IMG/VR virus record: IMGVR_UViG_3300043449_002710
Span: 124,001-188,000 of that record
DNA: 64,000 nucleotides
Reading direction: 5' to 3' (one strand)
Under the pieces are notes generated by a model, which searched no databases, had not been told where the DNA came from, and was given only the letters and a program-made list of their open reading frames with translations. This document shows, one piece after another, positions 1,751-62,921 of this stretch. The position numbers and the translations under genes are program-made. Each line of letters opens with the position of its first letter. Within the stretch, counting starts at the first letter, position 1.

Positions 1751-1765
1751 AAACTAACAATAAGC

Positions 1766-2311
1766 TTATTGTTTTTTCACCCCGTAGAAATATAAATCCC
1801 TAGGATAAGAATTCACGAAAAAAGCAAACTCACTGAAAATGGCGTCCACGTGCAAGACTTGGCGAATATCTTTTTCGGTCAAATTCTTATAGTAATCAAA
1901 CCAATCGCCATGCGCCGCCAAGAGCGGGGCAGAGTTAGGATCTGTCCTGCGCGTGCCGTGTTCTGGCCTGCCTTCAGTTGCGCAGGTGAAAAGAAACAAC
2001 CCACCTGGGGTCAGCATTCGAACGATGTTCTGAAGTGAAAGCGCGTAGTGCTGATCGTGCTCGAAGCACTCTGTTGAAATGATGGTGTCGTAAGACCCGT
2101 CAGGGGAATCCAATTCGTGAGCTTTGCAGACTTTATCTACGTTTTTCCCCTCACCCACATCGATTCCAAAGTAAGAACAATTCTCAAACAAGAACCTATT
2201 GTTCCCATTGATGTCCAAAGACCCCACATCGAGTACCCGTTTTCCAACGAAGTGCTCTGGAAGCTTGGCCTTAACTCTCTTACAAAAATCCATCTGTTGT
2301 GGGTGCGCCAT
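1766..2311 (-). CDS. Class I SAM-dependent methyltransferase
   Basis: VLDVGSLDING, YDTIISTECFEHD, LTPGGLF; start moved to MAHPQQ at 2311 after SD GAGGGG. Confidence 0.85.
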   Translation of the reverse strand: MAHPQQMDFCKRVKAKLPEHFVGKRVLDVGSLDINGNNRFLFENCSYFGIDVGEGKNVDKVCKAHELDSPDGSYDTIISTECFEHDQHYALSLQNIVRMLTPGGLFLFTCATEGRPEHGTRRTDPNSAPLLAAHGDWFDYYKNLTEKDIRQVLHVDAIFSEFAFFVNSYPRDLYFYGVKKQ

Positions 2312-2340
2312 CCCCTCAATTAACCAAAATCGAAACGGTT

Positions 2341-2559: not shown

Positions 2560-2608
2560 TTAACACGAGGCCCTATTTTTATAAATAGATTTATTTGATC
2601 AGGTAATC

Positions 2609-2650: not shown

Positions 2651-2651
2651 T

Positions 2652-3511: not shown

Positions 3512-3528
3512 ATCTCTAAAATAATCTA

Positions 3529-4536: not shown

Positions 4537-4541
4537 TCTGT

Positions 4542-4808: not shown

Positions 4809-6566
4809 TTAATCCTCATCCGATTTGTAGTACGCAAACGGAAGCCCTTTGCAGAGAGTCCCCTTTTTAATCGCCTTGATGATAGCAGCCGATGTCACCC
4901 CCAAAAAGTCGGCTGCGTGTTTAGGTGTGTAAAAACAGATATTCGTGGAAACTACACGGCAAGCGGATCTCAAGGGACGGGCTTTCTTGGGGGCAGAACC
5001 GTTTTCCCTAAGCCACCTAGCCTTGACCTCGGGCCTAGCCTCTCCACGCAGCACGATATTGATCCAATTCTTATCGATACCGAGCTGATCCGCGATCTTG
5101 GCTGACGGAATTCCGAGTGCTTTGAGTTTGAAGGCTTCGAGCAAATCTTCTTCTGGGATTTGGGTGTAGTCTCTTTTTTTTGGTCCATTCCAAGCTTTGA
5201 AGCGTTCAGTCTTTCGTTCTTTACTAATAAACGAATGAATAGACCCAATTTTATACTTTGACTCAATTTCTTTGACCGAGAGATTGTTAATAAAATAATC
5301 TGAAAAAATGGCACGTATCTCTTTTTCAGTTCTTTTTTTCTTCGAAGTATTCACTTCTATATGAGAAAATTTCTTTTTCCGCTCTGGGTCTATTTTCCCA
5401 TTCAGCAAATGATTTACATAGGTACGACTTGTCTTCAATTCACTCGCTATTTCGGATAACGATTTACCAGATTGGAATAAATTAAAAATAGCGTCTTTTT
5501 CAATTTCAGACATAACCCTTGGTCTAGCTAAGGGCCCGTGCTCTTCCTCAAATCTTCTTAGTAAATGAGGCCTTATTTTACCTGCTTGAATATGTTGAAT
5601 ATAACCAGGGCTCACAGATAAAATTTTTGAAATTTGCTTTAAAGATTTGCCTTTTTTTCTAAGAAAAAAGCTATCCATCAAAACCTTATCTGGTATTAAG
5701 TATGACTCGAAATCATACCCTCGATTCACGTTGTACCCGTTCTCAGTGTGATGAGATTTTAGCTTCTCAATCCACAAAGCTTCCTTGTCTTGAAGTTCTT
5801 TCAATGTCGATGCTGTATCTATTTCCTCGATCCAGAAATTTTCTAATCCAATAGATCGAATCGCTGAATGTATCGGCAAGGGGCTTCCGTTTGTGGAGTC
5901 ATAAGTATGTCGCTGAAATCTGCGAGTTAAGGCCTGAGTAGTCATTCCAACGTAAAGTTTATCGTTTATCTTGTTTTTGATACAATAAATGCTTCCGTGT
6001 ACTTCGGGGTTGCTCGGTTTCAATACATACTTGAAAATTATTTTGGGGGTTTCTTCCACTCGAACCAAGCCAATAGACTCAGCGTATTCTTTTTCTTTTG
6101 TGGACAACCTAACCGCTTTTTGCCAAATATTTTTTTTGTGAATGTAAGAATTTTTTGAATCCGTGTAATGATAAGATGACCGAGTTTTTCCAATTTCTAA
6201 AAAATTGGACGCTTTATAAATAGCTCCACTATGGCCAACTGTAGGATCTGCATAAGATATAACACTGCTGTATTGGGTATTAAGCCTCAACCACTTCAAG
6301 CATTTGCTAATAAAAAAACTAGCTGTGTTTTTGGGCGCTTCTGGCAGAATGACTAACCTACTGAGTTCAATGGCCCGACCATACCTGAGCGCGGATTGAT
6401 GCCTGCTAAAAGAAGAAAAAGTACAGGCACCTAAAAACTTATTTTCTGAATCAAACAAACCAAAACAATGAATGACCGATCGGGAATAAGTCTTAGAATA
6501 ATGATTCTCCGCGATAAATTTTCCTACTTTTTGATCGAACTCAATTCGTCTAACTTCTAGGTTCAT
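4809..6566 (-). CDS. Mom-family (GNAT-like DNA modification) domain fused to GIY-YIG endonuclease with multiple HTH repeats
   Basis: HYS, IELSRLV, ISYADPTVGHSGAIYKASNF (Mom); GSIYCIKNKINDKLYVGMTT..RRF..H, GYN (GIY-YIG); repeated GKSLxxIxxxL HTH units. Confidence 0.8.
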   Translation of the reverse strand: MNLEVRRIEFDQKVGKFIAENHYSKTYSRSVIHCFGLFDSENKFLGACTFSSFSRHQSALRYGRAIELSRLVILPEAPKNTASFFISKCLKWLRLNTQYSSVISYADPTVGHSGAIYKASNFLEIGKTRSSYHYTDSKNSYIHKKNIWQKAVRLSTKEKEYAESIGLVRVEETPKIIFKYVLKPSNPEVHGSIYCIKNKINDKLYVGMTTQALTRRFQRHTYDSTNGSPLPIHSAIRSIGLENFWIEEIDTASTLKELQDKEALWIEKLKSHHTENGYNVNRGYDFESYLIPDKVLMDSFFLRKKGKSLKQISKILSVSPGYIQHIQAGKIRPHLLRRFEEEHGPLARPRVMSEIEKDAIFNLFQSGKSLSEIASELKTSRTYVNHLLNGKIDPERKKKFSHIEVNTSKKKRTEKEIRAIFSDYFINNLSVKEIESKYKIGSIHSFISKERKTERFKAWNGPKKRDYTQIPEEDLLEAFKLKALGIPSAKIADQLGIDKNWINIVLRGEARPEVKARWLRENGSAPKKARPLRSACRVVSTNICFYTPKHAADFLGVTSAAIIKAIKKGTLCKGLPFAYYKSDED

Positions 6567-6660: not shown

Positions 6661-7770
6661 TTATACACGAACTCCGTGTACGCACGCTCTGCCGTTGCCG
6701 ATGGCCAAGCCCATGATTTTCTGCATGTACCAGCCGCGCTCAGGCTTGCCGATCAAGTACATATTGATCGGAGCAGTGGTCACGTCTTTACGAACCGTTT
6801 GAGCGCCGAGAACGTTCGGAGCGGAGAGGAAGTAGAATTCCCCTGCGTTCAGAACCTTCAAGGTGTCATAACGGAAGCCGTCCGTGATGAGGTTGACGCC
6901 GTAGATCGAACCCAGGGAACCCGACATGATGATCTCACGCTTGGTGACCGGATCGAAGTAGGTGGCGAATTCTGGATCAGCCAGGATGTCGTTCCAGAGG
7001 TCCATAGCAATTAATCCAGTTGCGGCTGGGTTACCCCATTGCTGGATCTGTGTACGAGCCTGAGCGAAAACGCTCGGGGAGAAAGTGGTGAAGCCGACGA
7101 GGTCGTTGTACGAAGTAGCAGCGACATCGAGGAGCGACTTGAACACTTGGTCTTCTTTCACCATGAGCTGCTCCAGGCCGTCGATGTATTTGTCATCGAG
7201 GAGGTCGCCTGGGGCCTGTTCAAGTTCACGGTCTTCGATCAGAATGTGAGCCTTGACGTAGAACTCATCTGGGAAGAGGTAGGACTGATTGATCTGGGAT
7301 GTAGCCATTCCAGAATCAGTGACAGCGTAGAAAGCCATCACGTCCTTTTTACGGATGCGCAGACGACCGATTTCGCCTTTTTTGAGGTCCTTGCGCATGA
7401 CGCACTTGCGGAGGAAGCCATCGCGACCCATAGCCTCTAAAATTTCGTCCCCTAAGACTTCCCCGACAACGCGCCATGTTTCGCCGGTCTTGTCGGCCAT
7501 AGCAGCTTCAACGAGTTCTGCACGCTGATTGGCGAACTCGTGCTGTTCCTGGACTTCGCCCGAGGTAGCAGCCAAGGCGAGAGCGCCGATACGCTGCATG
7601 AGTTCCTTTTTGGAACCAGCGTTGATTTCGCCGTTCTTGTCTTCGAAAGAACCAGCGCCAGCTTCGACTTTACCGGACTTATTGATGTGCAGAGCAGTTT
7701 TGCTCTCGGACAGTTCGTTGCCCGAACGGGTCACAACGACCGTCTTTTTTGTGTAAGGATTGGTAGCCAT
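6661..7770 (-). CDS. Major capsid protein (jumbo phage type)
   Basis: 369 aa, strongly biased codons, own terminator, HK97-like pattern (GxLGxIYGVNLITDGFR..L.VL..GE.Y); same strand as scaffold-like gene. Confidence 0.72.
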   Translation of the reverse strand: MATNPYTKKTVVVTRSGNELSESKTALHINKSGKVEAGAGSFEDKNGEINAGSKKELMQRIGALALAATSGEVQEQHEFANQRAELVEAAMADKTGETWRVVGEVLGDEILEAMGRDGFLRKCVMRKDLKKGEIGRLRIRKKDVMAFYAVTDSGMATSQINQSYLFPDEFYVKAHILIEDRELEQAPGDLLDDKYIDGLEQLMVKEDQVFKSLLDVAATSYNDLVGFTTFSPSVFAQARTQIQQWGNPAATGLIAMDLWNDILADPEFATYFDPVTKREIIMSGSLGSIYGVNLITDGFRYDTLKVLNAGEFYFLSAPNVLGAQTVRKDVTTAPINMYLIGKPERGWYMQKIMGLAIGNGRACVHGVRV

Positions 7771-9316: not shown

Positions 9317-9340
9317 GAGGCATTCTCCCTCGGTAGGTAA

Positions 9341-9878
9341 TTAAGGTTTATATAATAATAACCCGAGTCTAAGCTCGATCATTTGCAGGTTGCTTTCTGG
9401 AACGTAAACCCCATTTCTTCCTAACCAAATTTCAACGAAGTCATCACCAGAGTCTGTTTTGGCTACTTGTAGAGAAAATTGCAGGTTGTATGTTCCAGGG
9501 TACGCAAAAATAATATGCGATCCCGAAACAGAAACCCCATGAGCCTCGTCTGTTTGGTTATACGTGATCGTATTGATAGTGGAAGAATTTAACTGAGTAA
9601 CATTACTGAAAAAAGAACCGTAATATCCAAGCGCACCACCAGCCCCGGGCTCACCCATAGGTCCGGTAGGTCCGGTAGATCCAGTAAGTCCGGCAGGCCC
9701 ACTGGGTCACGTGGGTCCAACGACACCCATATCTCCGTCTTCGATGGCTTGCTTCAATGTTTTAGACAGACTGTTTGCTGTGACAAAAATCTTGTCGTCA
9801 TTGGTGGGAAGACGCGCTCAAACCTTGGAGAGTGAGTTCTGAGATGCTTTTGATATCTTCGTTCTGGATTTTGGACAT
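9341..9878 (-). pseudogene. Degraded collagen-containing fibre gene, paralog of 48466..48927
   Basis: MSKIQNEDIKSISEL, frameshift near 9805, then DDKIFVTANSLSKTLKQAIEDGD; in-frame TGA at 9707..9709 at a collagen Gly position; C-terminus looks truncated. Confidence 0.8.
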
Positions 9879-9915
9879 ACACTAAAAATAACAATGAAAA
9901 AGTTCCTGCTAGATG

Positions 9916-10533: not shown

Positions 10534-10631
10534 TGCCCACCCCTATTAAAAATAATAGCCGATCGGCATGACGCCTAGCTTCAATTTGGGATCTCGGGGG
10601 CAAGGGTATTTTTAATGTTGGAGTGCTATGG

Positions 10632-12202: not shown

Positions 12203-12562
12203 GTCTTAGAAAATAAACTAAAAAATACCGGATTGATTTTTGTTCGAGTGAGTTATATAAAGCGCTTATCCAAACAGCTTCTTGATCATCTTGACTGTGA
12301 CGTTGTTGACATACTCTCCCCCTGGGATTCTCCTCCCAGGGGGTGCATAAATCATTTCCAATACAATTCTGCTTGGTGACATGAAAGATGTGGAGCGCGG
12401 AAGTTTGATTCTGGCATTGATGAAATTCCTTTATCCTACTCTGAAATCCGTGGACCATACTGGTTCCGTTTCACAAGTCCAGGTTCAACTAACACACAAA
12501 GAGATTGAAGAGATTTAAATGAAATTTGAAGCCCGCACCGCGCTGGAGGGGAAGGCAAGCGA

Positions 12563-19270: not shown

Positions 19271-19335
19271 AAGTCAATATTATCAATATAAATATAAATA
19301 TCAATGAAAAATAAATAAAAAATAATCTAATGGAA

Positions 19336-23646: not shown

Positions 23647-23719
23647 CCCTTTAAAAATAACCTTCTCAGTTCAATGCTTCGATGTCTTGGTTTCCGTAAA
23701 ATTGGTAAAATTTAAGAGA

Positions 23720-25018
23720 ATGAAAAAGAACCCGACAGTAGAATTCCCAATAGCGCGAGCGATCCGAGAGCAGATTTTTAAGATTCCGCTTCTGCCTCAA
23801 GACCAGATCGTCGCTAGGTTCCAAGAACTGGATAGCGTACTGTACCCCCACGCTCTGAAATTGACAGAAAAATTTCCGCGTCTTCGGGACTATTTTCAAG
23901 AAGTCATGTTCCGAATCGCCTCGGGCAATACCCTGGGTAAAAATTACTACGACAAAGAAGACCATGAAGATGAAAAAGGGAAAAAATCCTCCAAGAAAAT
24001 CTTCAAGAACTCCGAGAAAAGAGTCCTAGCAAAGAGCTTTGCTTTATTTCGGTTGAAAAATCAACCCCAACGCTTCTGCTCTGTAGTGAAAGAAGCGGGG
24101 TTTCTCAGAGGCGTCTTTGAAGAAGCTATCGAGTTATTTTTGGAAATCACTCAAGGCTATACTGAGACCTTGGATGCGATGAGAAAAGCCGCCTTGGCTC
24201 ATTCCCCCGATTTCATCGAACTCGAAAGAAAAGTGCATTTCATAGAAAATGAGTTAGGGTTCTACAATTCTGACGAACTGGTTTTTCAGGTGGTGGAAAC
24301 AAATTCCGTTTGGAAGCAATACTCCAAACTCAGGGATAATCTGATCGCCCCCTATTTCCGAATGGTTTACACGATTGCTAAGAGCACTTCGACCTCCGAA
24401 GCGCAGACCCTAGACAATTTCCAAAACGGAATCTTTGGCTTGGTTCGGGCTGTCAAATGCTATACCCCCACCCGATTTGCCGCTTTTTCAGTTGTCGCAA
24501 AGACCTGGATCAAGCAATCCATCTTGCTCAACTTGAAAACCGAGGTCAATCTCATCAAGCTGCCTGTCGCGAATTGGCACCTCTATCAGAAGCTAGAAAA
24601 AATCCGACAGAAAATAGAAACAAAGATGCAACGAGACGCCACACTAGAGCAGATCTCGAAGGCTTCGAAAATCCCGTTAGAAAAAGTTCAAAAGATTTAC
24701 GAGAACGCCAAGCTCGTTCACGTCTTATCTCTTAATACCCCTAGTCAAACGGAAGACGAAAAATCCAATCAAGCCAAATGGAATTTGGAATCGATCCAAG
24801 CCAATGACACTCATCGAGAGCGGTTTGAGATTCAAAACGAATACGAATTGATTGAGCATGTGATTCATCTCTTTGATGAAGAAGAGCAGATCATCTTTGG
24901 CTTAATCTCAGGATGTTCGGATCTCATCCCAGAACCCGAGTTACCCCAGGAACTCATCCTAAAAGAATCCTTAAGGCAAAAAGCGGCCCGCAGGGGGCTC
25001 AGCGTTATTTTTAAATGA
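23720..25018 (+). CDS. RpoD-like phage sigma factor with degenerate region 4
   Basis: RMVYTIAK..DNFQNGIFGLVRAVKCY..FSVVAKTWIKQSI (region 2); IKLP..ATLEQIS..LSLNTP (region 3); no recognisable region-4.2 HTH. Confidence 0.82.
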   Translation: MKKNPTVEFPIARAIREQIFKIPLLPQDQIVARFQELDSVLYPHALKLTEKFPRLRDYFQEVMFRIASGNTLGKNYYDKEDHEDEKGKKSSKKIFKNSEKRVLAKSFALFRLKNQPQRFCSVVKEAGFLRGVFEEAIELFLEITQGYTETLDAMRKAALAHSPDFIELERKVHFIENELGFYNSDELVFQVVETNSVWKQYSKLRDNLIAPYFRMVYTIAKSTSTSEAQTLDNFQNGIFGLVRAVKCYTPTRFAAFSVVAKTWIKQSILLNLKTEVNLIKLPVANWHLYQKLEKIRQKIETKMQRDATLEQISKASKIPLEKVQKIYENAKLVHVLSLNTPSQTEDEKSNQAKWNLESIQANDTHRERFEIQNEYELIEHVIHLFDEEEQIIFGLISGCSDLIPEPELPQELILKESLRQKAARRGLSVIFK

Positions 25019-25709: not shown

Positions 25710-25934
25710 ATGTTTCCCACCAACTATGAAAATTTTTGGGACCTTTTAAAAGACGCGGATTTCGCACGTGGGTTTTTGACCCAATGCTACCATGAAGGGT
25801 TTTCTATCCACGGAATTAGGCATCCAGATGAAATTGAAGACATGCCTTGTACCTTGGTTGTGGAGCTTTCTAGGCAGATCTTGCCGTTTTACTACATGGA
25901 AAAAACCCCAAGCCCCAATTACTGGTTTCATTGA
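25710..25934 (+). CDS. Small hypothetical protein
   Basis: Coupled to flanking genes. Confidence 0.5.
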   Translation: MFPTNYENFWDLLKDADFARGFLTQCYHEGFSIHGIRHPDEIEDMPCTLVVELSRQILPFYYMEKTPSPNYWFH

Positions 25935-28900: not shown

Positions 28901-29035
28901 GGAATCAAACAAGCGGCTCAAAACGCCCAAGGCTTTTTAGGAAGCTTTCATTCTCGAAGCGGGGGAGGCAGTAGTGCAACCCCCAATCGAGGCAATCAGA
29001 TTTCTATCGCCAAGTATCGTGGCTTTTCCAAATAA
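25931..29035 (+). CDS. terL: Large terminase subunit with intein
   Basis: LLPWQ, Walker A GQRSGK/S split by intein, RGRT..AIDE Walker B, ASSP, RNase H-like LALD...YDRWQS...DDLFRA. Confidence 0.9.
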   Translation: MMRKSKKFLNPEDLLSQIISSDFDLSQFDQIDESHIPQPPNFIDWITGRDFCNATLLPWQVEAGMHLFSDYCPECSNPEYITELFDESMAEILDNIQFLDQGVCPKCKKNRLDLFTLGEKHPTKPSIKSEFIGNLGQRSGKTLAEHTEVLTPQGPVAIKDIQIGDIVYGWNRDGSVSETKVVNKFDHGIKPVRDLISRGRVLASCTDEHRWLTCRTSRYGKGTRKQRKSDFLELKLKDFKDNKDIAIHRKLIKIPCGEVSEPHAYAIAALLGDGCSRQGTSNTIDISSGDQNVPKKVASVLGAQTIKRNWEDNYTWHIRAGDTYSRETLNCHYYAEWCKGKYAHEKICDLETIKTWDRESCLEFLAGLIDTDGSVHGTGRLIVAFGCQSRSVVEAFAYLVYRLFQYKPAIHMDNRPKYFNGPIYQAKVNSTFFAKRILKEIDPYLASPNRKWKPEYEMIGNHNSHSDYTKPQAGEPYLCQTYDIEVGNETNLYVLAHEGLITHNSKMVALSTSYQLNRWLSLHDPLGFYGLPRMEVILGTFSALSAEQAEENLWMPFKGLIDASPWFKKYNDFLKSEEKRLSIPLCDVKDTYMFYPHKRLLISFTGSDDRKKRGRTRLFGAIDEIAFLNSEVGTSKKKVMDADKNYAALNNSLSTIRQKALMRLAEGHFNTIMPIMYNASSPYNVQDKIMRLTKSAPDNPFAVVIHRATWESNPDYSEKTCRAINPGLSQVEFERDFGAIPPFSDSPYIGDARVMEKLCAHKDHYRPLLNVTREVHVDMLGDKYLFLRAKAHQLDKNTPRLLALDNGYNQNAFGAAIFGYDSIQKKPVLQFLVSLYPDPQSNLSIHFPSMFENFILPIIQGLNIKHVFYDRWQSLDQIQRLRDMKINAEAHSLSFEKDMLPFKQQLLSGNMVLPPLEIASMQEVKDAVNPTQMTTDKPVANLIWQTLTVRQVGKKVLKPLDGDDDLFRAFVLGGSRFLSDEIQRIYATYAGIKQAAQNAQGFLGSFHSRSGGGSSATPNRGNQISIAKYRGFSK
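26354..27442 (+). mobile_element. Intein (363 aa) with LAGLIDADG homing endonuclease, Thr at position 1
   Basis: TLAEHTEVLT (block A), CTDEHRW (B), ALLGDG and LAGLIDTDG, TYDIEV (F), ITHN/S (G). Confidence 0.92.
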
Positions 29036-30845: not shown

Positions 30846-30941
30846 ATCTCAATTCTAACACACTTCGGTAAGTATTTGAATTATTTGATTTTAGGTGAAG
30901 CCTTTTCAAAAGCCAGCGAAAGCGGTGTTATTTTTAAGGGT

Positions 30942-38444: not shown

Positions 38445-38780
38445 GAATAATTCTCCTTACAGACCTACCTTGTCTGCATTTAGGTTATTGGCGATGCGAT
38501 ACCACAATTAAAAATAAGACTGTTTTAAAAGATGGTTAAAAGAAATTGGGACTGAAATAAATAGGCTACTAAGAAAAATCCGGAAAGAGTTAAGGCGTAC
38601 TACAAAGCCAGAATATACTCTGAAAAAGAAAAGGCAGAAGCTAGAGAACGCGCTCGTTTTGTGGCGAATTAACAATCGGTAACAGAACAGAACAGTAACT
38701 ATCTCCATTCAAGATTATAGGCCCTACGTTTTTCCTTAGATTCGTCTTCAGAAGACACTATTTTTTAACCTCAAATAATA

Positions 38781-39586: not shown

Positions 39587-39654
39587 TTCCGTCTCCTTGA
39601 AGAACTTTAATCAAAAACTTTTTCTAATTTAATAATAACCTATGTTTTAAAGCG

Positions 39655-43331: not shown

Positions 43332-43340
43332 ATATTAAAA

Positions 43341-44953
43341 CTAACCTTCACCTGTCGGGACTTTGGGAAGTTTCTTTTGCCCGAAGAAATCCAAGAACTC
43401 TTGCGGAGAAACCTTCGAAAGATCGACCACCACTTCATTGGGCGCTTTTTTATAGCCTGAGGGTAATACCATTCCAGCACTGCCAACCATCCGCATCAAA
43501 CCTTCCCTGAACTCGGGTCGGATCGCAAAGGCCAAAGGCACAAGCACCTTATCGGCATTCTTGTATTCAGCGGATTCCCCATTTTTTTTACCCCAGGACC
43601 TAATCTCACCGGCTGAGAAAGTGGTGCCCAGCAAGCGACCGATCTGGCCCAAGCGTTCGTTCTCAACTTCCTTGACCCAGAAATAAAGAAAGGCTCTTTC
43701 CTCTAGGCTTAGGTCCCTTAGTTCTTCCCAGCTACGGTTGGTGGCGGCCCAAAGATACCCGAGCACCGAAAGCTCGGGATCGTCCTTGGTCGCCTTTACT
43801 GCAAAGGGAGGGCTTCTACCTCAGAGGTCAAACCACGATCATCCATGGGGATGCCATGGATCTGGCAGAAGACTGGCACTCCTTTTTCCACCGCCAAGTC
43901 ATAAACTTCTTTGCAGTCATCTACAGGGCAGGTGAACTTTCTTTGCTTAGGATCAAAAGAGGATTTCAGTCCCAAGTCTTTGAAAGAAACTTCAAAGGCG
44001 GTGTAGATTTTTTCAACCAAGTTAGGATTAAAGGGGAACAAATTGTCCAGGGAGGGTTCTCCTTGGTACATCTCGATCAAGGTTTGGGCAGTCAGGATTC
44101 TAACCTCCGTGGGAGGATTCAAAGGGTCTTTGACCGAACCTTCTGGAACTAATTCAAGCACTTCAGCAATCGGCATTTTCTCAACTCGAACAATACCTGT
44201 GGCTGCCGTACAAAGCTTCAGCATCATTTTGACTGCTTCAGTTTGACCCGCTACTTCTTGGATCTTATTGAGAACCCAAGGATAAACAGAAGACGGTGGA
44301 GGTAGAAGCTCGAAACCCACGTCTTCAACTATCACTTCCACGGGCTTTACTCTTTCAAGTGAAAGTTTCTCGCGCATCTTTTTCAAGACCGGATTCACTT
44401 CTTTTTTGAAAGTCTTTGGGGTTGCCGCTGCCTGCGGCTGCGATTGTTGTTGCTGGGCTGCTTCTTTTTCAGCCTTTCTTTGTAGTTCGAGTTTTCTTTT
44501 TTTCAATTCCAATTCTTTCAACTCGATCTCAAGCAGTTCTTCTTCAGTCAAATTACTACCTTCTTCCAAAGCTTTGGGTTCTGATGCTGGGGTTTTTTCC
44601 ACGGGTTCCACTTTCTGTTCTAATTTTTTGCCCTTAGTCTTGAGTAATTCTTCTACTGTGATCCCTCGTTCTTTGGCGATCTCTCGCAAAGCGTACTCAT
44701 TCAACTCAGGATCAAATTTTCGAGTTTGATTCCCGGCAAAAGGTTCCTCGGGCTTTGCCTTTTCTTCCATGTATTTTGAAACTTGATCTTGGGGAATCAC
44801 CGGGAAAGGAGCAGGAGTAGGATCGCCTAGATCTTTTCTTTTATTAGTAGGGCGCTCTGGCATCTTGGGCTTTGAAGGCTGAAAATCATCCACCACAGGA
44901 CGTGCATCTTTAAATCGACTACCCATGGTCTGCTTGATCTTTTCGTCATCCAT
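43341..44953 (-). CDS. Tail assembly chaperone pair: G (43796..44953) and -1 frameshifted GT (about 537 aa)
   Basis: C CCT TTG heptamer at 43802..43808 two codons before the stop; -1 frame open into ORF 43341..43766. Confidence 0.75.
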
Positions 44954-46104: not shown

Positions 46105-46149
46105 AACTTAAAATAACTCTAGGGATCAAGTTTCCTGGGGTGGGCATCC

Positions 46150-46228
46150 TAATTGCTTGATATAAATACGGTTTTTAAAAAAACTTCCCTGTTGACTGTC
46201 TTTATAAATATATTTATATTGATAATAT
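46150..46228 (+). promoter_or_regulatory. Sigma70-like promoter with IHF-like site and shared 20-mer
   Basis: TTGACT-17-TATATT; TATCAAGCAATTA on minus strand at 46150..46162. Confidence 0.65.
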
Positions 46229-48415: not shown

Positions 48416-48465
48416 TGTGATCCCCTATAGATAATAACCTCAGGGGGATTTGGTATTTGTTTGAA

Positions 48466-48927
48466 CTACGCGAGGTAATAAATCCGCAAGCGATCCGAAG
48501 TGTCCAAGACGGATTGAAGGCCTTTGCCATCCCAACTTAAAAAATCATCAGACACAATAAAATCTTCGTCATAAGTAGCTGGACCGCCGCCGCTAAAAAT
48601 ATCCACCAAAACTTTATTGGGTTCTTTGGGTGCCAATGGAAGAGAGAGACCTTTATCCAAAAGCATCTGGCCAGTGATTTGTGGGTAAATGCAAACTTGC
48701 TGAATCGAATTACTTTCGATTAAACTTTGAAGAGATTGTTCGGCTGCGATAGCGCGAGAAGTCTCTACAGCGGTGAGATCGCCATCTTCTATGGCGTCTT
48801 TCAGAGTTTTATTGACTAAGTTGGCAGAAACAAAAATTTTGTAGTCAGGAGGTAGACTTGAAGCATCTAGTCCTAGATCCAACAACTCGGCTAAACTTTT
48901 GATATCTTCATTCTGAATCTTAGACAT
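48466..48927 (-). CDS. Fibre-associated structural protein
   Basis: MSKIQNEDIKS N-terminus; ETSRAIAAEQSL repeat shared with 36030..38444. Confidence 0.6.
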   Translation of the reverse strand: MSKIQNEDIKSLAELLDLGLDASSLPPDYKIFVSANLVNKTLKDAIEDGDLTAVETSRAIAAEQSLQSLIESNSIQQVCIYPQITGQMLLDKGLSLPLAPKEPNKVLVDIFSGGGPATYDEDFIVSDDFLSWDGKGLQSVLDTSDRLRIYYLA

Positions 48928-48959
48928 ACCGAGCCTTTTACCAAAATTGAATTTTTGTG

Positions 48960-51618: not shown

Positions 51619-51694
51619 AAGTTTTTCCTCTCCCAAGAAAATAACTCAATTTTTGTCTCGGTCCTCTTTTGAATAGAATCGTTATTCTTTATAT

Positions 51695-54846: not shown

Positions 54847-54863
54847 GGGTTATTTTTTAGAGT

Positions 54864-56432: not shown

Positions 56433-56462
56433 ATTGACTTATTAAGTCAATTAAGTTAAAAT
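56432..56462 (+). promoter_or_regulatory. Sigma70 promoter overlapped by perfect palindrome
   Basis: AATTGACTTA-T-TAAGTCAATT; TTGACT-17-TAAAAT. Confidence 0.75.
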
Positions 56463-56468
56463 TCTCCT

Positions 56469-58120: not shown

Positions 58121-58132
58121 ACTGATGTTTTA

Positions 58133-58543
58133 CTAATCCACTTTGGATTTCAAAGCGCCCGACTCCATGTGCTTTCTGAGAGTCTTCATCATGAGCTTGC
58201 ACTTCTTGCCGCGATCCTTGATCTCTTGCCGCCAGGATTTCACGTAGTAAGCGAGATCCTCTTTGGCTTGAAGATGATCTTGAGTCATGTGGTTGAGCTT
58301 CACTTCTTCAAGCTTTCTTTTAGCCTCAATCACATCGGGTTCTTGCTCAAGCTTTTCCTTGTGCGCTTTCAGTTCTTCTTCGAGGTCGAGCTTCTTGGCG
58401 TCATTCTTGAGCATCTCTTTGGACCGCTCAAGCATCAGTTGCTCACGAGCAGCTTCAATCGCCAAATCCTCAGGCTTCATGGCGTTGATCGCGTCCACGA
58501 CTTCCTGAGGAAGGTCACCCTTCTTCTTAGGTTTCTTAGCCAT
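58133..58543 (-). CDS. Coiled-coil hypothetical protein
   Basis: SD AGGGGG, charged helical composition. Confidence 0.6.
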   Translation of the reverse strand: MAKKPKKKGDLPQEVVDAINAMKPEDLAIEAAREQLMLERSKEMLKNDAKKLDLEEELKAHKEKLEQEPDVIEAKRKLEEVKLNHMTQDHLQAKEDLAYYVKSWRQEIKDRGKKCKLMMKTLRKHMESGALKSKVD

Positions 58544-59125: not shown

Positions 59126-62100
59126 ACATCTTCGTAGGTGCCGTCTTCGAAAAGAATGCCCACATGATAGCCTTTGTCGATGTGCTCTTCGGCGAGATCC
59201 ATGGCTTCTTCGTAGGTTTTAACTTTGACTTCTTTTTTTCCTTCACCTTTTTTATCAAGGATGACAGTCAGTTCTTCATCTTTCGCGGAAGCTTCTGCCT
59301 GATTGTCATATTTCTCGATGATCGACCCGATGTCAGTATACAAGAATTTATTCTTTTCTCGGTCATATACAACGGTCAAGTTGTAGGTATCGCCCGAGTT
59401 AATATACTGAAATCTTGGACGGGTCGGATTGCTTTCATTCGGGTCGTAGGCTTCCACACCGTGGTATCCCACTAAATCAGAAACGTGCTCCAAGATATTT
59501 TCGACATAGCTAGCTGGGTTATAAGTATTGTGCTTTTTGTCGTAATATCTTTCGCCGTTCTCATAGGCTTTTTTAGCTTCAGCCATGGCCGCTTTCAATT
59601 CTTCCAAGGTGGTTGAGGCTTGCGTTTTATAATAAGAAGACTCCACAACAGATATCTGAATATCCCCAATAATCTTCTTAATGGTTTCAATCGCCAAATT
59701 CGGATCGACCTTACCTGGAATCTTAAGAATGCTATCGTCGTCAAAGGAGATGCCAGAGACGCCTAAAGCTTTCTCGATTTTTTTGATCTGATCCAAAGAG
59801 ACTTTGTCAAAACCAATTTTGAGTGCAAAAGCGGTTTCTGAAGCAGAGGCTTGCGTTTTATAAGAAGACTCCGCAGTGAATCCGTCAAACCAATCACCGA
59901 ACTCTTCGGTGTGTTTGACATTCTCAGGTTTTTCACAAGTCTTAGAGCTAGTCTCGTCGTCGTTGCACCACTCTTTCGCTTCTTCCAAAGACAGCCCTTT
60001 TTTCATGACTTTTTGAGGGTGGCCTTCTTTATAAAAGCGAACGATCTTGTAGGTTTTTTCTTCTTCTTCTTCTTCCTCGTCTTCATCTGAGGAGGCTTCA
60101 ATTTTCTCGCTAGAAAGGTATTCCACCAAGTCGTCAGCCACAACCGATCCATCGGCTTCGATCACGACCGGAACACCGGCTTCTGGATCTTCACCCATGG
60201 ACTCAGCCCAGAAGATATAGACTTCATCGGGTTTAGCGGCATACTCGACCCCACGCTGAACTTCCATCAGGTCTGGGAGATCGCCCACTTTGGGTTCTTC
60301 GATGATGGTTTCATTTCCGGCCTTATCGACCAGGATGAGCTGGCAGCCTTCCATCACCTCGTCATCACCAAGCTGAAAGTAGTCTCCACGATTAGAGGAA
60401 ACTTCATCTCCGTTCTCATCGATGAGAACAGCGCTCTTATACTTCACAGCGGGGTTTTCTTTAACTGGGCCTGAGAAGAAAAAATCTTTCACCCAGAGGC
60501 GATCAATCTTGTCGCTGTCTTTGAACACGTCGATGTAAGTGCCTTGATACTTATCGAATTCGCGGTGTTCGCATTCAAAGCCATGCTTCTCAAGTTCTTT
60601 ACAGATCTTGTCAAAAGTCTCGTGATCGTAATCCTGATCGGCTTCGCCAGTGGCTTCAATCCGAACAGCGGCTTGCACCGAAGATTTGCTGGTCAATTCC
60701 ATAGTGTTGCCTTTGTCGTCCTCAATGTGTTTTCCGAACGGGCTAGAGTCTTTGACCCATTTCCAGTTGCCGGTCCCAAAAAACTTGTTTGCTTTGATTT
60801 CGGCAGCTTTAGTTGGATCGCCAGAGATCAAAACCTCCCAAGGCTTTCCGATCTTAGCGGAGTCTTCGTCATAGATATGGATGCGGTCGAATTCTTTGGC
60901 AAGATTCGGGAAAGGATCGGACTCCGCCGACTTGACGGCTTTTTTGGCGGCAGATTCCATTTTGTAAGGGCTCACATTGCCGTGATCACTCACGTACCAA
61001 ACGTTAGGCCAAAAGTTATGCTTTTGCATCCAAGCCTTGGCAGCGGCTTCTGCTTCCTCTGCCGTATTGAACTCGCCAAGGAATTCCCCATTTTTAATAG
61101 AGACAGAAATCTTTGATCCTAGTGGGCCTGAGTCAGAAAAAATAATGTCCTGGTCGTCAGGTTGATCATCTTGAAATTCTTCTTCTTCGGATTCTTCTTC
61201 TTCGGATTCTTCCGTAGCCGAAAGAACACCGTGTTCATAAACGTCTTCAGCAAATTGATCGAAATCCATCCGATCTTCGATTGAATAGTCTTGATCGAGT
61301 TTGTACTGCTGGTACATGGATTCAAGCTCTGTGAGGTTTTCTTTTAACCAAGCTTCAAAATCGGTTAGTTCTTCCACGAGTTCTCCGCCTTCCCAGTCTT
61401 CTTCAGCACCACTTTTAACTTTGTTTTCAGTCTTGGCTGTCCACATATCTTGGTTCTCGCTGTCTTCTGGCTTGGTGGTGATGATCAGAGAGTTCCCATC
61501 CACGTCACTCCACTCTGGAATAAGAGTGGGGTAGGTTTTCTTGGTTTTGAATCTCCAGAAAAAATCCGTAAGGTTATCCGCAAACTTTTCTACTCTATGC
61601 GGGTCAGCCAAGATGTCTCCGAGTTCCAAAGCCATCTTACCTTCGCCAAGCTCTTTCAAAGAGTATTCACCGTGGAGTTCTTTATCCAAAAAGATTTCCA
61701 ACGTGGTTTTGAACTTCTTCAAATCCGAATCCGAATCGTCTTCGGCTCCACCCACAGCTTGATTTCCATTTTTAGGCAGCCTAACCATTCGGCTGTGTCC
61801 GGTGAAACCAAATTTCTTATAAAATGTTCTTAATTTTGAAATCGGCATTTTGTTTTTCTCTTTAGGTACGGGCTGTAAATCAAGAATCACGCCATACTTA
61901 TCCGCTAAATCTACAATAAACTGCATTGCTCTTGTGCCTTGGCCTTGTCTTGGTTCTAAGGCTTGAATCCACTTCAGAGCAACTGAGCGTTCCCCTTTGG
62001 GTCCACCCAGCCAAGGTCTCAACTCGATCACCGCTTCATTGTTAAAAATTCTAATTTTATTTTCAAATGGGTGTGGCTGGGTTTTTCCCCAGACATCCTT

Positions 62101-62784
62101 CATAAATTTATCAATATTATCCGACTTCAAATCGGCTGGGCTAGCCTCTTGATCTGTTCGCAAGCGGAGTTTAAGTTTTTGAGTTTCGGAAGAGGTCAGC
62201 ATCTTTACACTCTTTCCAAACTTGTCTTTAAGATGAGATGCGACTAGCCCCAAAAGATTCTTATTAAAAGGGGCATCCCTGTCATCGGATGCGAATTTCT
62301 TAATGCCCATTTTAGCAAGCTTGGTCCAGTCCAAAAGGGCTTTAGCTTCAGGGGCCGCTTCCTTCTTGTGCTTCTCGGCCAAGGCTTTGGCCATCTCAGA
62401 GATCTCTTCGTCTCGGGCGATTTGGTTCACTAGATCCCTGACCTGATCCCGATAGCCGCCTGGAAGCTTCTCTGGCATCGAAGTGTTGAAAAACTCTTCT
62501 GGCTTCTGCTCGATCTTCCAACCCGAGGAACTGGCAATTTGTTCCAAGTATTTGGTGTGCTTCGAGGTGGTTCGAGAATACTTCTTCTCGTTGACGTAGA
62601 GAAGATCGCTTGGCGCATCGCGTTTAGCGATAATGGTGCGATAGCTGTAAAGGGTGTCGCCCTTGGCCCAGATGATATCTCCGTCTTTGCCTACGCTTTC
62701 GCCGGTAGATAACCAAGAACGAATCAAGCCTTCTTCTTTGGCCCCAGCCATAGCCTTCTCAGCCACAATCTTTTGTCTTGCCAT
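59122..62784 (-). CDS. Large acidic modular polyprotein-like protein including a GNAT domain
   Basis: RQGQGTRAMQFIVDLADKYGV...LRTFYKKFGF; domains separated by hydrophobic-x-A/S/G acidic linkers. Confidence 0.7.
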   Translation of the reverse strand: MARQKIVAEKAMAGAKEEGLIRSWLSTGESVGKDGDIIWAKGDTLYSYRTIIAKRDAPSDLLYVNEKKYSRTTSKHTKYLEQIASSSGWKIEQKPEEFFNTSMPEKLPGGYRDQVRDLVNQIARDEEISEMAKALAEKHKKEAAPEAKALLDWTKLAKMGIKKFASDDRDAPFNKNLLGLVASHLKDKFGKSVKMLTSSETQKLKLRLRTDQEASPADLKSDNIDKFMKDVWGKTQPHPFENKIRIFNNEAVIELRPWLGGPKGERSVALKWIQALEPRQGQGTRAMQFIVDLADKYGVILDLQPVPKEKNKMPISKLRTFYKKFGFTGHSRMVRLPKNGNQAVGGAEDDSDSDLKKFKTTLEIFLDKELHGEYSLKELGEGKMALELGDILADPHRVEKFADNLTDFFWRFKTKKTYPTLIPEWSDVDGNSLIITTKPEDSENQDMWTAKTENKVKSGAEEDWEGGELVEELTDFEAWLKENLTELESMYQQYKLDQDYSIEDRMDFDQFAEDVYEHGVLSATEESEEEESEEEEFQDDQPDDQDIIFSDSGPLGSKISVSIKNGEFLGEFNTAEEAEAAAKAWMQKHNFWPNVWYVSDHGNVSPYKMESAAKKAVKSAESDPFPNLAKEFDRIHIYDEDSAKIGKPWEVLISGDPTKAAEIKANKFFGTGNWKWVKDSSPFGKHIEDDKGNTMELTSKSSVQAAVRIEATGEADQDYDHETFDKICKELEKHGFECEHREFDKYQGTYIDVFKDSDKIDRLWVKDFFFSGPVKENPAVKYKSAVLIDENGDEVSSNRGDYFQLGDDEVMEGCQLILVDKAGNETIIEEPKVGDLPDLMEVQRGVEYAAKPDEVYIFWAESMGEDPEAGVPVVIEADGSVVADDLVEYLSSEKIEASSDEDEEEEEEEKTYKIVRFYKEGHPQKVMKKGLSLEEAKEWCNDDETSSKTCEKPENVKHTEEFGDWFDGFTAESSYKTQASASETAFALKIGFDKVSLDQIKKIEKALGVSGISFDDDSILKIPGKVDPNLAIETIKKIIGDIQISVVESSYYKTQASTTLEELKAAMAEAKKAYENGERYYDKKHNTYNPASYVENILEHVSDLVGYHGVEAYDPNESNPTRPRFQYINSGDTYNLTVVYDREKNKFLYTDIGSIIEKYDNQAEASAKDEELTVILDKKGEGKKEVKVKTYEEAMDLAEEHIDKGYHVGILFEDGTYEDV

Positions 62785-62921
62785 TCGAGTATTCCCTAAG
62801 TCGTTTGAATTGCTACTAAGAAAATAACTCGGCTTTACTCGTCTTTGACCTGAACCCCCCAGGCAACCCCACCCCTAAAAACGAACTCAGAATTAGTAAA
62901 ATCAACCCCAAGGGGAAGCGC

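What the first reader, a model, noticed from the sequence alone, without database searches (positions are those of the whole stretch)
1756..62828. GTTATTTTT late-promoter candidate paired with a sigma factor lacking region 4.2
Seen: TTATTTT-type elements lie on the coding strand just upstream of starts. Plus-strand coordinates: 1756, 3518, 7878 (MCP), 9353, 9884, 10548, 12210, 23653, 25004, 30927, 33893, 38510, 39631, 46110, 48430, 51638 and 51681 (divergent pair), 54849, 62821. In many cases only 5-8 nt separate the motif from ATG, with little or no SD (GTTATTTTTAAGGGT-ATG, GTTATTTTTTAGAGT-ATG, GTTATTTTTAAGTT-ATG). I saw no shared -35 element. The phage sigma (23720..25018) has regions 2-3 but no -35-reading HTH. 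Known: T4 gp55 reads a -10-only late promoter. Inference: this is the cognate late regulon with near-leaderless mRNAs; it also corrects two start calls (3511, 30942).
Basis: partly seen in the sequence, partly recalled or inferred. Interest (0 to 1): 0.75.

Follow-up and report, generated by a model that had tools for sequence, protein, structure and literature searches.

The report
Phage -10-only promoter with leaderless genes
An uncultured 223-kb freshwater jumbo phage carries about 50 copies of a conserved G-TTATTTT-TAA signal just upstream of its genes. It looks like a promoter that needs no -35 box, often starts the mRNA at the ATG itself, and is probably read by the phage's own unusual sigma factor.

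Summary
The motif is real and far beyond chance. Exact GTTATTTTT occurs 8 times in the window against 1.24 expected. TTATTTT is the most enriched A/T 7-mer in intergenic DNA (57 observed, 7.8 expected). It points toward gene starts 48:8 (GTTATTTT 20:0). ATG follows it at exactly 6-7 nt in 22 of 162 cases against about 4 expected. Nothing is conserved upstream of position -5, so there is no -35 element. The motif sits at orthologous positions in six related metagenomic phages (sigma identity 42-68%, GC 47-57%), at variable distance from the start codon.

Read as G(-14)T(-13)TATTTT(-12..-7), it puts the A of ATG at +1/+2. About 43% of sites would therefore give leaderless mRNAs.

- The sigma is not cleanly missing region 4. 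Profile alignments to RpoD run through a vestigial 4.1/4.2 recognition helix, although Pfam and fold search do not see a canonical HTH.
- The "late" label is only partly supported, because the motif also heads non-structural units.
- Two other promoter-like classes exist: AATT[A/G]GTAAAA, which precedes the sigma gene in five of the seven phages examined, and canonical TTGACT-N17-TATAAT.

The link between sigma and motif is inferred, not shown. This is a new variant of a known kind.

The parts
23720..25018 (+). Phage sigma70-family factor, 432 aa. It has a phage-specific N-terminal region of about 200 aa, region 2 (208-269), region 3 (290-349) and a vestigial region 4 (helices 387-397 and 410-424).
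   Evidence: Pfam r2/r3. PHROG sigma. 39 full-length homologues, none with Pfam r4. hhalign and PDB RpoD alignments run through the 4.2 recognition helix. AF2 model and Foldseek match E. coli sigma70. The isolated C-terminal model has no sigma4 hit.
23700..23711 (+). Class-2 motif AATTGGTAAAAT. Its GGTAAAA core ends 9 nt before the sigma ATG. It is the predicted promoter of the sigma gene and differs from the TTATTTT class.
   Evidence: The same (G)ATTGGTAAA lies upstream of sigma in L002, L003 and L021, with an ATTAGTAAA variant in L001. It was not seen upstream of sigma in L004, L022 or L023.
23654..23660 (-). Class-1 site: aGG-TTATTTT-TAAAGGG-ATG, 7 nt to the ATG at 23646 (162-aa gene divergent from sigma).
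   Evidence: PWM 18.2. Orthologous sites in L001, L002, L003 and L021.
25005..25011 (+). Class-1 site embedded in the last sigma codons (GTT ATT TTT AAA TGA = V-I-F-K-stop), 19 nt before the ATG at 25031. It heads the unit that contains the terminase large subunit.
   Evidence: PWM 14.5. Conserved in L001, L002, L003 and L021, with variants that track the sigma C-terminus in L002, L004 and L023.
30928..30934 (+). Class-1 site: GTG-TTATTTT-TAAGGGT-ATG, 7 nt to the ATG at 30942 (114-aa gene followed by the portal gene). It supports the corrected start.
   Evidence: PWM 19.1. Orthologues are 112-119 aa and carry the motif upstream.
54850..54856 (+). Class-1 site: GGG-TTATTTT-TTAGAGT-ATG, 7 nt to the ATG at 54864 (PcfJ-like, 522 aa).
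   Evidence: PWM 17.5. Pfam PcfJ.
51638..51688 (.). Back-to-back divergent pair of class-1 sites: 51644-51638 on the minus strand and 51682-51688 on the plus strand.
   Evidence: PWM 18.8 and 11.1. Each direction heads a transcription unit.
9885..9891 (-). Class-1 site 6 nt before the ATG at 9878 of a fibre-family paralogue (MSKIQNEDI...) whose frame is interrupted.
   Evidence: PWM 18.7. Translations.
12210..12216 (-). Class-1 site 7 nt before the ATG at 12202 (97 aa).
   Evidence: PWM 16.0.
10549..10555 (-). Class-1 site 15 nt before the ATG at 10533, with a GGGG SD in the short leader. It heads the minus-strand block that contains the major head protein.
   Evidence: PWM 15.2. Major head protein PHROG at 6661-7770.
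9355..9361 (-). Class-1 variant GGG-TTATTAT, 38 nt before the ATG at 9316 (445 aa, immediately upstream of the major head protein gene).
   Evidence: PWM 12.4.
1757..1763 (-). Class-1 variant TTATTGT, 6 nt before the ATG at 1750.
   Evidence: PWM 14.5.
3518..3524 (-). Class-1 site 6 nt before the ATG at 3511. It suggests a shorter start (145 aa against 175 aa).
   Evidence: PWM 11.5. ORF table.
46110..46116 (-). Class-1 site 5 nt before the ATG at 46104 (290 aa).
   Evidence: PWM 13.0.
48431..48437 (-). Class-1 variant TTATTAT 15 nt before the ATG at 48415 (collagen-like tail fibre), with a GGGG SD in the leader.
   Evidence: PWM 12.8. Tail-fibre PHROGs.
38511..38517 (-). Class-1 site 66 nt upstream of the 804-aa YadA-stalk/DUF2793 fibre gene.
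   Evidence: PWM 18.6. Pfam.
39632..39638 (-). Class-1 variant TTATTAT 45 nt before the ATG at 39586.
   Evidence: PWM 16.6.
62821..62827 (-). Class-1 site 36 nt before the ATG at 62784 (1220 aa).
   Evidence: PWM 14.3.
43338..43344 (-). Class-1 variant TTAGTTT 6 nt before the ATG at 43331 (361 aa).
   Evidence: genome coordinate 167344.
46192..46226 (+). Class-3 site: canonical TTGACT-N17-TATATT, then 6 nt, then the ATG at 46227. Predicted host-sigma promoter, also with leaderless geometry.
56434..56468 (+). Class-3 site: TTGACT-N17-TAAAAT, then 6 nt, then the GTG at 56469.
1361..1372 (-). Class-2 site TTCTAGTAAAAC. Its AGTAAAA core ends 8 nt before the ATG at 1352 (dTDP-glucose 4,6-dehydratase).

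Best explanation
The conserved element R-n-G-TTATTTT-T-W-A is the core, and only, promoter element of a phage-specific transcription class. Read as G(-14) T(-13) T(-12) A(-11) T T T T(-7) plus a TAA discriminator, it keeps the two bases that every sigma70-family -10 reader flips out (A-11 and T-7). It adds invariant T at -13, -9 and -8 and has no -35 partner.

Host core RNA polymerase would open DNA here and start about 7 nt downstream of T-7. This is inferred; no phage RNA polymerase was found. The specificity subunit is most likely the phage's own 432-aa sigma, whose region 4 is degenerate.

In 22 of 51 confident sites the start codon sits 5-9 nt after the motif, so the mRNA would begin at or within 1-2 nt of the AUG and be translated as a leaderless message. 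In the other sites a leader of 10-50 nt, often with an SD, follows.

The sigma gene carries a different conserved motif (AATTGGTAAAAT). Sigma would therefore be made first, from a promoter read by a pre-existing holoenzyme, and would then switch on the TTATTTT class. That class includes the packaging, portal, head and fibre units, plus some non-structural units, so it is better called middle/late than strictly late.

Shown: the motif's existence, strand bias, spacing, lack of a -35, and conservation across relatives. Inferred: promoter function, the TSS position, leaderless translation, the sigma assignment and the timing.
For: Motif statistics.

Logo: information only from -3 to +9, nothing upstream.

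Spacing: the peak at 6-7 nt matches the geometry reported for -10 motifs that drive leaderless mRNAs in Deinococcus radiodurans, about 6-7 bp upstream of the ORF (PMC12340547).

General leaderless geometry: TANNNT ends 6-7 nt before 35 of 242 starts, against a baseline of about 5 per offset. The two other promoter-like classes show the same spacing.

Conservation in six related phage loci, with variable distance to the ATG:
- GTTATTTT: 11 of 16 occurrences lie 3-30 nt before the first start of an ORF.
- TTATTTTTA: 9 of 10.
- Controls: 1/24, 1/32 and 2/26.

Not a terminator: only 4 of 51 sites have an upstream hairpin, and mean MFE equals that of shuffles.

Unit heads: the motif occupies the heads of units in divergent intergenic regions, where a promoter is obligatory.

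Sigma:
- Only one sigma region-2 gene, and no RNAP beta, beta' or T7-type gene, was found in the record.
- Its region 4 is undetectable by Pfam in 31 of 32 homologues and is not a canonical HTH in the models.
- The sigma gene is preceded by the class-2 motif in this phage and four relatives (L001-L003, L021).
- A class-1 site lies inside the last sigma codons, separating the sigma gene from the co-directional terminase unit.
Against: - No transcript data exist. The only public run that holds the sequence is a DNA metagenome, so TSSs, timing and leaderless status are untested.
- TATTTT is also an acceptable -10 for a primary host sigma, so host sigma, perhaps with a phage factor that blocks -35 use, could read it.
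- The phage sigma keeps residues that align to the -35-contacting E585, R588 and Q589 of sigma70. That is odd for a factor that reads -35-less promoters.
- The motif also heads non-structural units.
- The record is only 81% complete by CheckV, so another sigma or an RNA polymerase could lie in the missing part.
- The host is unknown, so efficient leaderless translation is assumed.
Confidence: 0.6

Rival explanations
1. The TTATTTT element is a -10/extended -10 promoter read by the host's primary sigma. A small phage protein might disable -35 recognition, as gp39 of Thermus phage P23-45 does. The phage sigma would then read another class (for example AATTRGTAAAA) or only a few promoters.
For: - TATTTT keeps A-11 and T-7, and G at -14 (55% of sites) recalls an extended -10.
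- Canonical TTGACT-N17-TATAAT sites show that the host sigma reads TATAAT-like -10s in this genome.
- -10-only late promoters with no known phage sigma exist in phage K (PMC11598898). Factor-driven switching to -35-independent promoters is known in P23-45 (PMC3950348, abstract only).
Against: - T is near-invariant at -13, -9 and -8, and TAA at -6..-4. These are not primary-sigma preferences.
- The sigma gene's only visible upstream signal is the class-2 motif, in a divergent intergenic region. Class 2 therefore cannot depend on the sigma unless the sigma is packaged in the virion.
- The motif stays constant in relatives whose GC content ranges from 47 to 57%.
Confidence: 0.2
2. The motif is the binding site of a phage transcription activator or repressor that sits over or beside a weak promoter. 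It is not the element the sigma itself reads.
For: It is a short, highly conserved, oriented DNA word at fixed positions in the regulatory regions of several phages.
Against: - It is asymmetric, only about 12 bp long and not a repeat or palindrome.
- It holds TANNNT in the exact -10 register relative to the start codons.
- No other -10-like element is conserved beside it.
Confidence: 0.1
3. The motif acts at the RNA level. It could be a U-rich translational enhancer bound by ribosomal protein S1, or an endoribonuclease site that processes polycistronic transcripts just upstream of the start codon.
For: It lies on the coding strand, close to start codons that often lack an SD.
Against: - Distance to the start codon ranges from 5 to 66 nt, and at orthologous genes in relatives from 5 to 27 nt. 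An RBS-like signal would keep its spacing.
- It heads divergent units that need a promoter.
- Sites with longer leaders carry ordinary SDs.
- A specific A at position 3 and a G at -1 are not expected of a generic U-rich enhancer.
Confidence: 0.07
4. The motif is an artefact of composition or of terminators: AT-rich intergenic DNA, or the T-tracts of intrinsic terminators.
For: Intergenic DNA is AT-rich. A few sites follow a hairpin, for example genome coordinates 48821 and 120594.
Against: - The permuted words TTTATTT, TTTTATT and T7 show no orientation or spacing bias.
- Only 4 of 51 sites have an upstream hairpin.
- The motif is conserved in a relative with 57% GC.
Confidence: 0.03

Closest known systems
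-10 motif adjacent to ORFs driving leaderless mRNAs in Deinococcus-Thermus (PMC12340547) and leaderless genes in bacteria generally (PMC3160421, PMC4633059)
   Same: A TANNNT-type -10 element ends 6-7 nt before the start codon, so transcription would begin at the AUG. It coexists with SD-led genes. It can also be used to correct start-codon calls.
   Different: Here the hexamer is a fixed, phage-specific word (TTATTTT plus flanks), not the host's TATAAT-like consensus. It sits in a virus of unknown host and is proposed to be read by a viral sigma.
Thermus phage P23-45 (gp39-driven switch of host RNA polymerase to -35-independent, extended -10 promoters; PMC3950348, PMC4124052). That its phage mRNAs, and those of phiYS40, are often leaderless is recalled from memory of Berdygulova 2011 and Sevostyanova 2007, which were not read here.
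   Same: The phage's non-early genes use -35-less promoters placed right at the start codon. The temporal switch works by abolishing the need for sigma region 4.
   Different: The Thermus phages keep the host sigmaA and add small region-4/flap-binding proteins. This phage encodes a whole sigma70 homologue whose own region 4 is degenerate. The motif sequence also differs.
T4 late transcription (gp55 sigma with gp33 and the gp45 clamp; TATAAATA at -10)
   Same: A phage-encoded specificity factor and a -10-only AT-rich promoter with no -35. Structural genes are among the targets.
   Different: gp55 is a small region-2-only protein that needs gp33 and a DNA-loaded sliding clamp. The factor here is 432 aa, aligns to RpoD from region 1.2/2 through 4.2, and has a different motif (TTATTTT). 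T4 late mRNAs are not typically leaderless. No gp33 or gp45 dependence was tested.
Bacillus phage SPO1 gp28 and gp33/34, and other phage-encoded sigma cascades (PMC13401047, seen in abstract only)
   Same: Early genes are read by host sigma. A phage sigma gene expressed from an earlier promoter class then redirects the host core to phage-specific promoters.
   Different: From memory, not checked here: SPO1 sigmas recognise bipartite -35/-10 promoters. Here no -35 exists and many units are leaderless.
Staphylococcus phage K late promoters (PMC11598898)
   Same: Alignment of late promoters shows only a -10 element, sometimes extended, and no -35.
   Different: In phage K the factor responsible is unidentified, and the -10 is host-like.

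Membership tests
sigma70 family | Region 2 (core binding, -10 recognition and melting) | tested here: met
   Pfam Sigma70_r2 in 32 of 32 family members. The profile aligns to RpoD region 2 in the PDB search, E about 1e-30.
sigma70 family | Region 3 | tested here: met
   Pfam Sigma70_r3 in 31 of 32 members.
sigma70 family | Region 4 with the 4.2 helix-turn-helix that reads the -35 element | tested here: inconclusive
   Pfam r4 hits 1 of 32 members at E=0.11. hhalign and hmmsearch against PDB align FDEEE..IFGLISG and KESLRQKAAR to sigma70 4.1 and RERIRQIEAK, with E416, R419 and Q420 conserved. In the AF2 models a proline-rich loop replaces the first HTH helix, the protein ends about 10 residues after the recognition helix begins, and the isolated domain has no sigma4 fold match.
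T4 gp55-type late system | Small sigma-like factor with only a region-2-like segment | tested here: not met
   The protein is 432 aa, has regions 2 and 3 and a vestigial region 4, and its best structural and sequence matches are primary (group-1) sigmas such as RpoD/SigA.
T4 gp55-type late system | TATAAATA -10 element without a -35 | tested here: not met
   The consensus is G-TTATTTT-TAA. The no--35 half of the feature is met.
T4 gp55-type late system | Dependence on a gp33 co-activator and a sliding clamp | not tested
   No search for gp33 or gp45 homologues was made.
Leaderless-gene promoter architecture | -10 hexamer (TANNNT) ending 6-7 nt upstream of the start codon | tested here: met
   Reference geometry from PMC12340547.
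Leaderless-gene promoter architecture | Primary transcript 5' end at the first base of the start codon | not testable with these tools
   No RNA run holds the sequence.
Extended -10 promoter (TGn) | T-15 G-14 upstream of the hexamer | tested here: inconclusive
   G at -14 in 28 of 51 sites. T at -15 in only 13 of 51. T at -13 is near-invariant, which is not part of the TGn definition.
Intrinsic terminator | GC-rich hairpin directly followed by a T-run | tested here: not met
   4 of 51 sites have an upstream hairpin with MFE <= -10, and the mean equals that of shuffles.

The most novel reading that the evidence does not exclude
A lineage of uncultured freshwater jumbo phages uses a sigma70 homologue that resembles a primary (group-1) sigma but has been evolutionarily stripped of a working -35-reading domain. 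This would be a built-in equivalent of AsiA/gp39-type sigma remodelling. It would recognise a 12-bp single-element promoter (G-14, T-13, TATTTT, TAA) and fire leaderless mRNAs. It would form the last tier of a three-tier cascade: canonical -35/-10, then AATTRGTAAAA, then GTTATTTTTAA. The promoter of the packaging unit would be written into the sigma's own conserved C-terminal V-I-F-K codons.
Probability: 0.4. Interest if true: 0.7.

Novelty: new variant of a known kind. Interest (0 to 1): 0.55.

Why it matters
- It gives a testable regulatory map (three promoter-like classes and about 75 predicted unit heads) for a jumbo-phage lineage that has no cultured member and very few annotatable genes.
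- If confirmed, the sigma would be a natural example of a full-length primary-type sigma that has given up -35 recognition. That is useful for understanding minimal promoter recognition, and possibly as an orthogonal single-element expression part.
- The motif improves start-codon calls and operon boundaries.
- The abundance of leaderless geometry narrows the range of plausible hosts.

Tried and rejected
- Unconstrained PWM iteration drifted into generic T-rich sequence. I replaced it with training restricted to intergenic sites, plus orientation and spacing controls.
- blastn of the sigma-terminase region against the phage collection found only tRNA-sized matches and no relative.
- PHROG annotation of class-1 downstream genes was nearly uninformative, so temporal class could not be assigned by function for most units.
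- The search for RNA-seq runs found only one DNA metagenome.
- Host inference from the dTDP-glucose dehydratase gave only weak hints: the few named top hits are Bdellovibrionota MAGs. I did not build on this.
- The 'moraphage' jumbo lineage paper (PMC12619734) describes phages with predicted Bacteroidota hosts and shows no link to this phage. I dropped it.
- The terminator and composition explanations were tested and rejected.
- Foldseek on the isolated C-terminal domain found no sigma4 match. This weakens but does not remove the sequence-level homology to region 4.
- The promoter/terminator scan tool call failed on a size limit and I did not repeat it. A script replaced it.

Full report
CONTEXT. 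The window is bases 124001-188000 of a single 223,260-bp contig. It is an IMG/VR virus record, linear, 81% complete by CheckV, with 46% GC. It holds a major head protein (6661-7770, minus strand), a terminase large subunit interrupted by a LAGLIDADG insert that looks like an intein (25931-29035), a portal (31288-33543) and collagen-like fibres. Outside the window it holds an intein-containing PolA, helicases, an intein-containing RecA, DnaB and a tubulin/FtsZ-like protein. blastn found no relative in the phage collection. The only public run that holds the DNA is a freshwater DNA metagenome. This is therefore an uncultured jumbo phage with no transcript data.

IS THE MOTIF REAL? Yes.
- Exact GTTATTTTT occurs 8 times in the window against 1.24 expected, and none of 100 shuffles reaches 8.
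- In an unbiased 7-mer screen of all intergenic DNA of the genome, TTATTTT is the most over-represented A/T word: 57 observed against 7.8 expected from intergenic composition, and 46% of all its genomic copies lie in about 10% of the sequence.
- It is strongly oriented. 48 copies point toward an adjacent gene start and 8 toward a gene end, with available strand-length in a ratio of 1.4:1. GTTATTTT gives 20:0. The permuted controls TTTATTT and TTTTTTT give 12:12 and 13:12.
- Without any gene model, ATG follows TTATTWT after exactly 6 or 7 nt in 22 of 162 occurrences. Other offsets average 2.1 each (Poisson p about 1e-9), and permuted words show no peak.
- A PWM built from intergenic sites gives 46 hits at score >= 14, of which 42 are intergenic.

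Of the 19 coordinates, 17 score >= 11 on the stated strand. 7878 (the 'MCP' site) and 33893 do not. Nine of the 19 have the 5-8-nt spacing. The rest have 11-107 nt. At least seven further sites in the window were missed.

ANATOMY. Fifty-one confident sites were aligned on the motif. Information is confined to positions -3 to +9: R, n, G, then T T A T T T T (A in 49 of 51; the last T in 51 of 51), then T, W, A. C is almost absent for the next 10 nt. Relative entropy is about 0 at every position from -50 to -6, so there is no -35 element. Only 4 of 51 sites are preceded by a stable hairpin, and mean upstream MFE equals that of shuffles, so these are not terminator T-tracts.

Twenty-two sites lie 5-9 nt from the start codon (21 ATG, 1 GTG). 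Twenty-six lie 10-50 nt away, half of them with an SD-like element in the leader.

Mapped onto sigma70-family geometry, the motif reads G(-14) T(-13) T(-12) A(-11) T(-10) T(-9) T(-8) T(-7). The two positions that all sigma70-type factors flip into pockets, A-11 and T-7, are the near-invariant ones. A start 7 nt downstream of T-7 falls on the A of ATG for the 6-nt class and one base before it for the 7-nt class. This is the spacing reported for -10 motifs that generate leaderless mRNAs in Deinococcus (about 6-7 bp upstream of the ORF; PMC12340547).

The geometry is a general property of this genome. TANNNT ends 6 or 7 nt before 35 of 242 predicted starts, against about 5 per other offset. A classical SD peak at 5-7 nt serves many other genes.

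CONSERVATION ELSEWHERE. The sigma has 39 full-length homologues, all from metagenomes, several on 170-250-kb contigs. I fetched seven neighbourhoods.

Synteny is conserved: a divergent gene of about 165-180 aa in L001-L003, L021 and L022 (L004 and L023 have a shorter divergent gene); sigma; a gene of about 250 aa; the terminase; a gene of about 113 aa; the portal.

The top PWM hits fall at orthologous positions in L001-L004, L021 and L023:
- Before the divergent gene.
- Inside the last codons of sigma, ahead of the terminase unit.
- Before the gene of about 113 aa that precedes the portal.

This holds even in L001 at 57% GC. Distance to the ATG varies from 5 to 27 nt.

Across 118 kb of relatives, 11 of 16 GTTATTTT and 9 of 10 TTATTTTTA lie 3-30 nt before the first start of an ORF of at least 70 aa. 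Permuted controls give 1/24, 1/32 and 2/26.

Conserved sequence with variable spacing argues for a DNA-level promoter rather than a ribosome-binding signal.

The site at 25005-25011 is written into the sigma's C-terminal codons (GTT ATT TTT AAA TGA = V-I-F-K-stop). The terminal F-K is nearly invariant in 32 homologues. Protein variants track DNA variants: VTFK with GTTACTTTTAAA in L002, and ISFK with ATTAGTTTTAAA in L004 and L023.

Class 2, (G)AATT[A/G]GTAAAA:
- It lies 7-9 nt before ATG or GTG. Read as TAAAAn, it has the same leaderless register.
- It precedes the sigma gene here (23700-23711) and in L002, L003 and L021, with an ATTAGTAAA variant in L001. It was not seen upstream of sigma in L004, L022 or L023.
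- It also precedes a dTDP-glucose 4,6-dehydratase, three glycosyltransferases and the tubulin-like gene. A near variant (TTTTGGTTAAAAC) precedes an HNH endonuclease.

Class 3 is canonical TTGACT/TTGATA-N16-17-TATAAT/TATATT with an AT-rich ATTTATATT spacer:
- It is found before small genes at 59.9-62.1 kb and at 46192 and 56434 in the window.
- Several copies again end 6 nt from ATG or GTG.

A rough census gives 41 class-1, 19 class-2 and 15 class-3 gene heads.

THE SIGMA. Pfam finds regions 2 and 3 only. Across 32 family members, region 4 is hit once, at E=0.11, whereas every cellular sigma in the same search carries PF04545.

Region 4 is nevertheless not simply absent:
- hhalign against cellular sigmas (probability 99.7%) and an hmmsearch of the family profile against PDB (RpoD, E about 1e-30) both align the C-terminus to region 4.1 (FDEEE..IFGLISG) and to the 4.2 recognition helix (KESLRQKAAR against RERIRQIEAK).
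- E416 and Q420 are invariant and R419 nearly so. They align to sigma70 E585, R588 and Q589.
- The AF2 model (pLDDT 76) has helices at 387-397 and 410-424, joined by a proline-rich loop where the first HTH helix should be. The protein ends about 10 residues after the recognition helix begins.
- The full model matches E. coli sigma70 by Foldseek.
- The isolated C-terminal model (pLDDT 78) matches no sigma4 domain.

I therefore call region 4 vestigial.

The 223-kb record holds only this one sigma region-2 gene. No RNA polymerase beta, beta' or T7-type gene was found, although the T7-type search also rang in none of its control genomes. This fits redirection of the host core enzyme.

LINKING SIGMA TO MOTIF. 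This step is inferential. The sigma gene sits at the head of a plus-strand unit in a divergent intergenic region. Its only recognisable upstream signal is class 2, in five of the seven phages examined. Class 2 must therefore be read by something present before the sigma exists. Class 1 is the most abundant phage-specific signal, has no -35, and starts a new unit immediately after the sigma stop codon. The simplest cascade is class 3 and class 2 (host holoenzyme, perhaps modified), then the sigma, then class 1. I rate this at about 0.55-0.6. The main rival is that host primary sigma reads class 1.

'LATE'? Partly. Class 1 heads the terminase unit, the portal unit, the head block, a weak baseplate-like hit and four fibre genes. 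It also heads the unit upstream of PolA (genome 36159), sits in front of two genes inside a helicase block (56552, 57465), and precedes a 2451-aa NUDIX protein (30873) and a PcfJ-like gene (54850 in the window). 'Middle/late' is the safer label. Most downstream genes have no annotation.

START CALLS. The start at 30942 gives a 114-aa product that matches orthologues of 112-119 aa. The start at 3511 removes a 73-nt overlap with the upstream ORF. Both corrections are reasonable, and the first is supported by comparison with relatives.

COMPARISON WITH KNOWN SYSTEMS. The behaviour resembles several known systems:
- -10-adjacent leaderless expression in Deinococcus-Thermus (PMC12340547).
- The -35-independent promoters of Thermus phage P23-45 (PMC3950348, PMC4124052). 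That its mRNAs are often leaderless is from memory.
- The -10-only late promoters of phage K (PMC11598898).
- In logic, phage sigma cascades such as SPO1 and T4.

It is not a member of the gp55 system. The factor is a full-length homologue of a primary-type sigma, and the motif differs.

The new element is the combination: a conserved viral sigma with a degenerate region 4, a 12-bp single-element promoter, widespread leaderless geometry, and a three-class hierarchy, all in an uncultured jumbo-phage lineage.

VERDICT. It is a new variant of a known kind, with interest 0.55.

Noticed in passing
window 23700-23711 (+), 1361-1372 (-), 48936-48947 (-), 62890-62901 (+), about 58130-58140 (-); genome-wide: A second conserved promoter-like motif, (G)AATT[A/G]GTAAAA, lies 7-9 nt before ATG or GTG. 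It precedes the sigma gene here and in four relatives (L001-L003, L021). It also precedes sugar-modification genes and a tubulin-like gene, and a near variant precedes an HNH gene.
   Followed up: partly
window 46192-46226 (+), 56434-56468 (+), 19280-19325 (-); genome 59917, 61392, 62069: Canonical TTGACT/TTGATA-N16-17-TATAAT-like promoters with a recurrent AT-rich spacer (ATTTATATT). Several end 6 nt from ATG or GTG. They cluster before small genes at 59.9-62.1 kb and are probably host-sigma early promoters.
   Followed up: partly
window 25002-25018: The class-1 motif for the downstream unit is encoded by the sigma's last codons (V-I-F-K-stop). The terminal F-K is nearly invariant in 32 homologues, and protein variants track DNA motif variants in relatives. 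This suggests a dual coding and promoter constraint.
   Followed up: partly
window 9339-9878 (-): A paralogue of the MSKIQNEDI... fibre family begins at 9878 behind a top-scoring class-1 site. It hits a stop after 26 codons, and the collagen-like remainder (ORF 9341-9658) is in another frame. This could be a frameshift, a pseudogene or an assembly error. Intact paralogues lie at window 48466-48927 (class-2 motif upstream) and genome 14749-15201 (class-1 motif upstream).
   Followed up: partly
window 25931-29035 (+); genome 40945-45039 and 95171-97549: The terminase large subunit carries a LAGLIDADG insert that looks like an intein. PolA and RecA carry Pfam-supported intein splicing and LAGLIDADG domains.
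   Followed up: no
genome 213054-214175 (+): A tubulin/FtsZ-family protein (PhuZ-like?) in a phage where no RNA polymerase gene was found. It has a class-2 motif upstream.
   Followed up: no
window 33540-33881 (-): A 113-aa ORF beginning MKKVLIIEDE looks like a CheY-type receiver domain. It has a TTATTTT core 11 nt upstream followed by an SD. The resemblance is from the sequence only and was not searched.
   Followed up: no
window 4809-6566 (-): A single 585-aa ORF combines a Mom-like DNA-modification N-terminus with GIY-YIG/HTH homing-endonuclease-like regions (PHROG hits).
   Followed up: no
whole genome, intergenic: Runs of seven G or C are almost exclusively intergenic (10 of 11 copies, 0.7 expected), for example window about 62850-62880.
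   Followed up: no
window 336-1352 (-): A dTDP-glucose 4,6-dehydratase is 64-73% identical to metagenomic homologues. The only named hits among the top 120 are Bdellovibrionota MAGs. CsrA genes occur next to sigma in relatives L004, L021 and L023. These are weak hints about the host.
   Followed up: partly
window 30124-30212 (-): A tRNA-Leu (anticodon TAA) lies between the terminase-associated gene and the portal unit.
   Followed up: no
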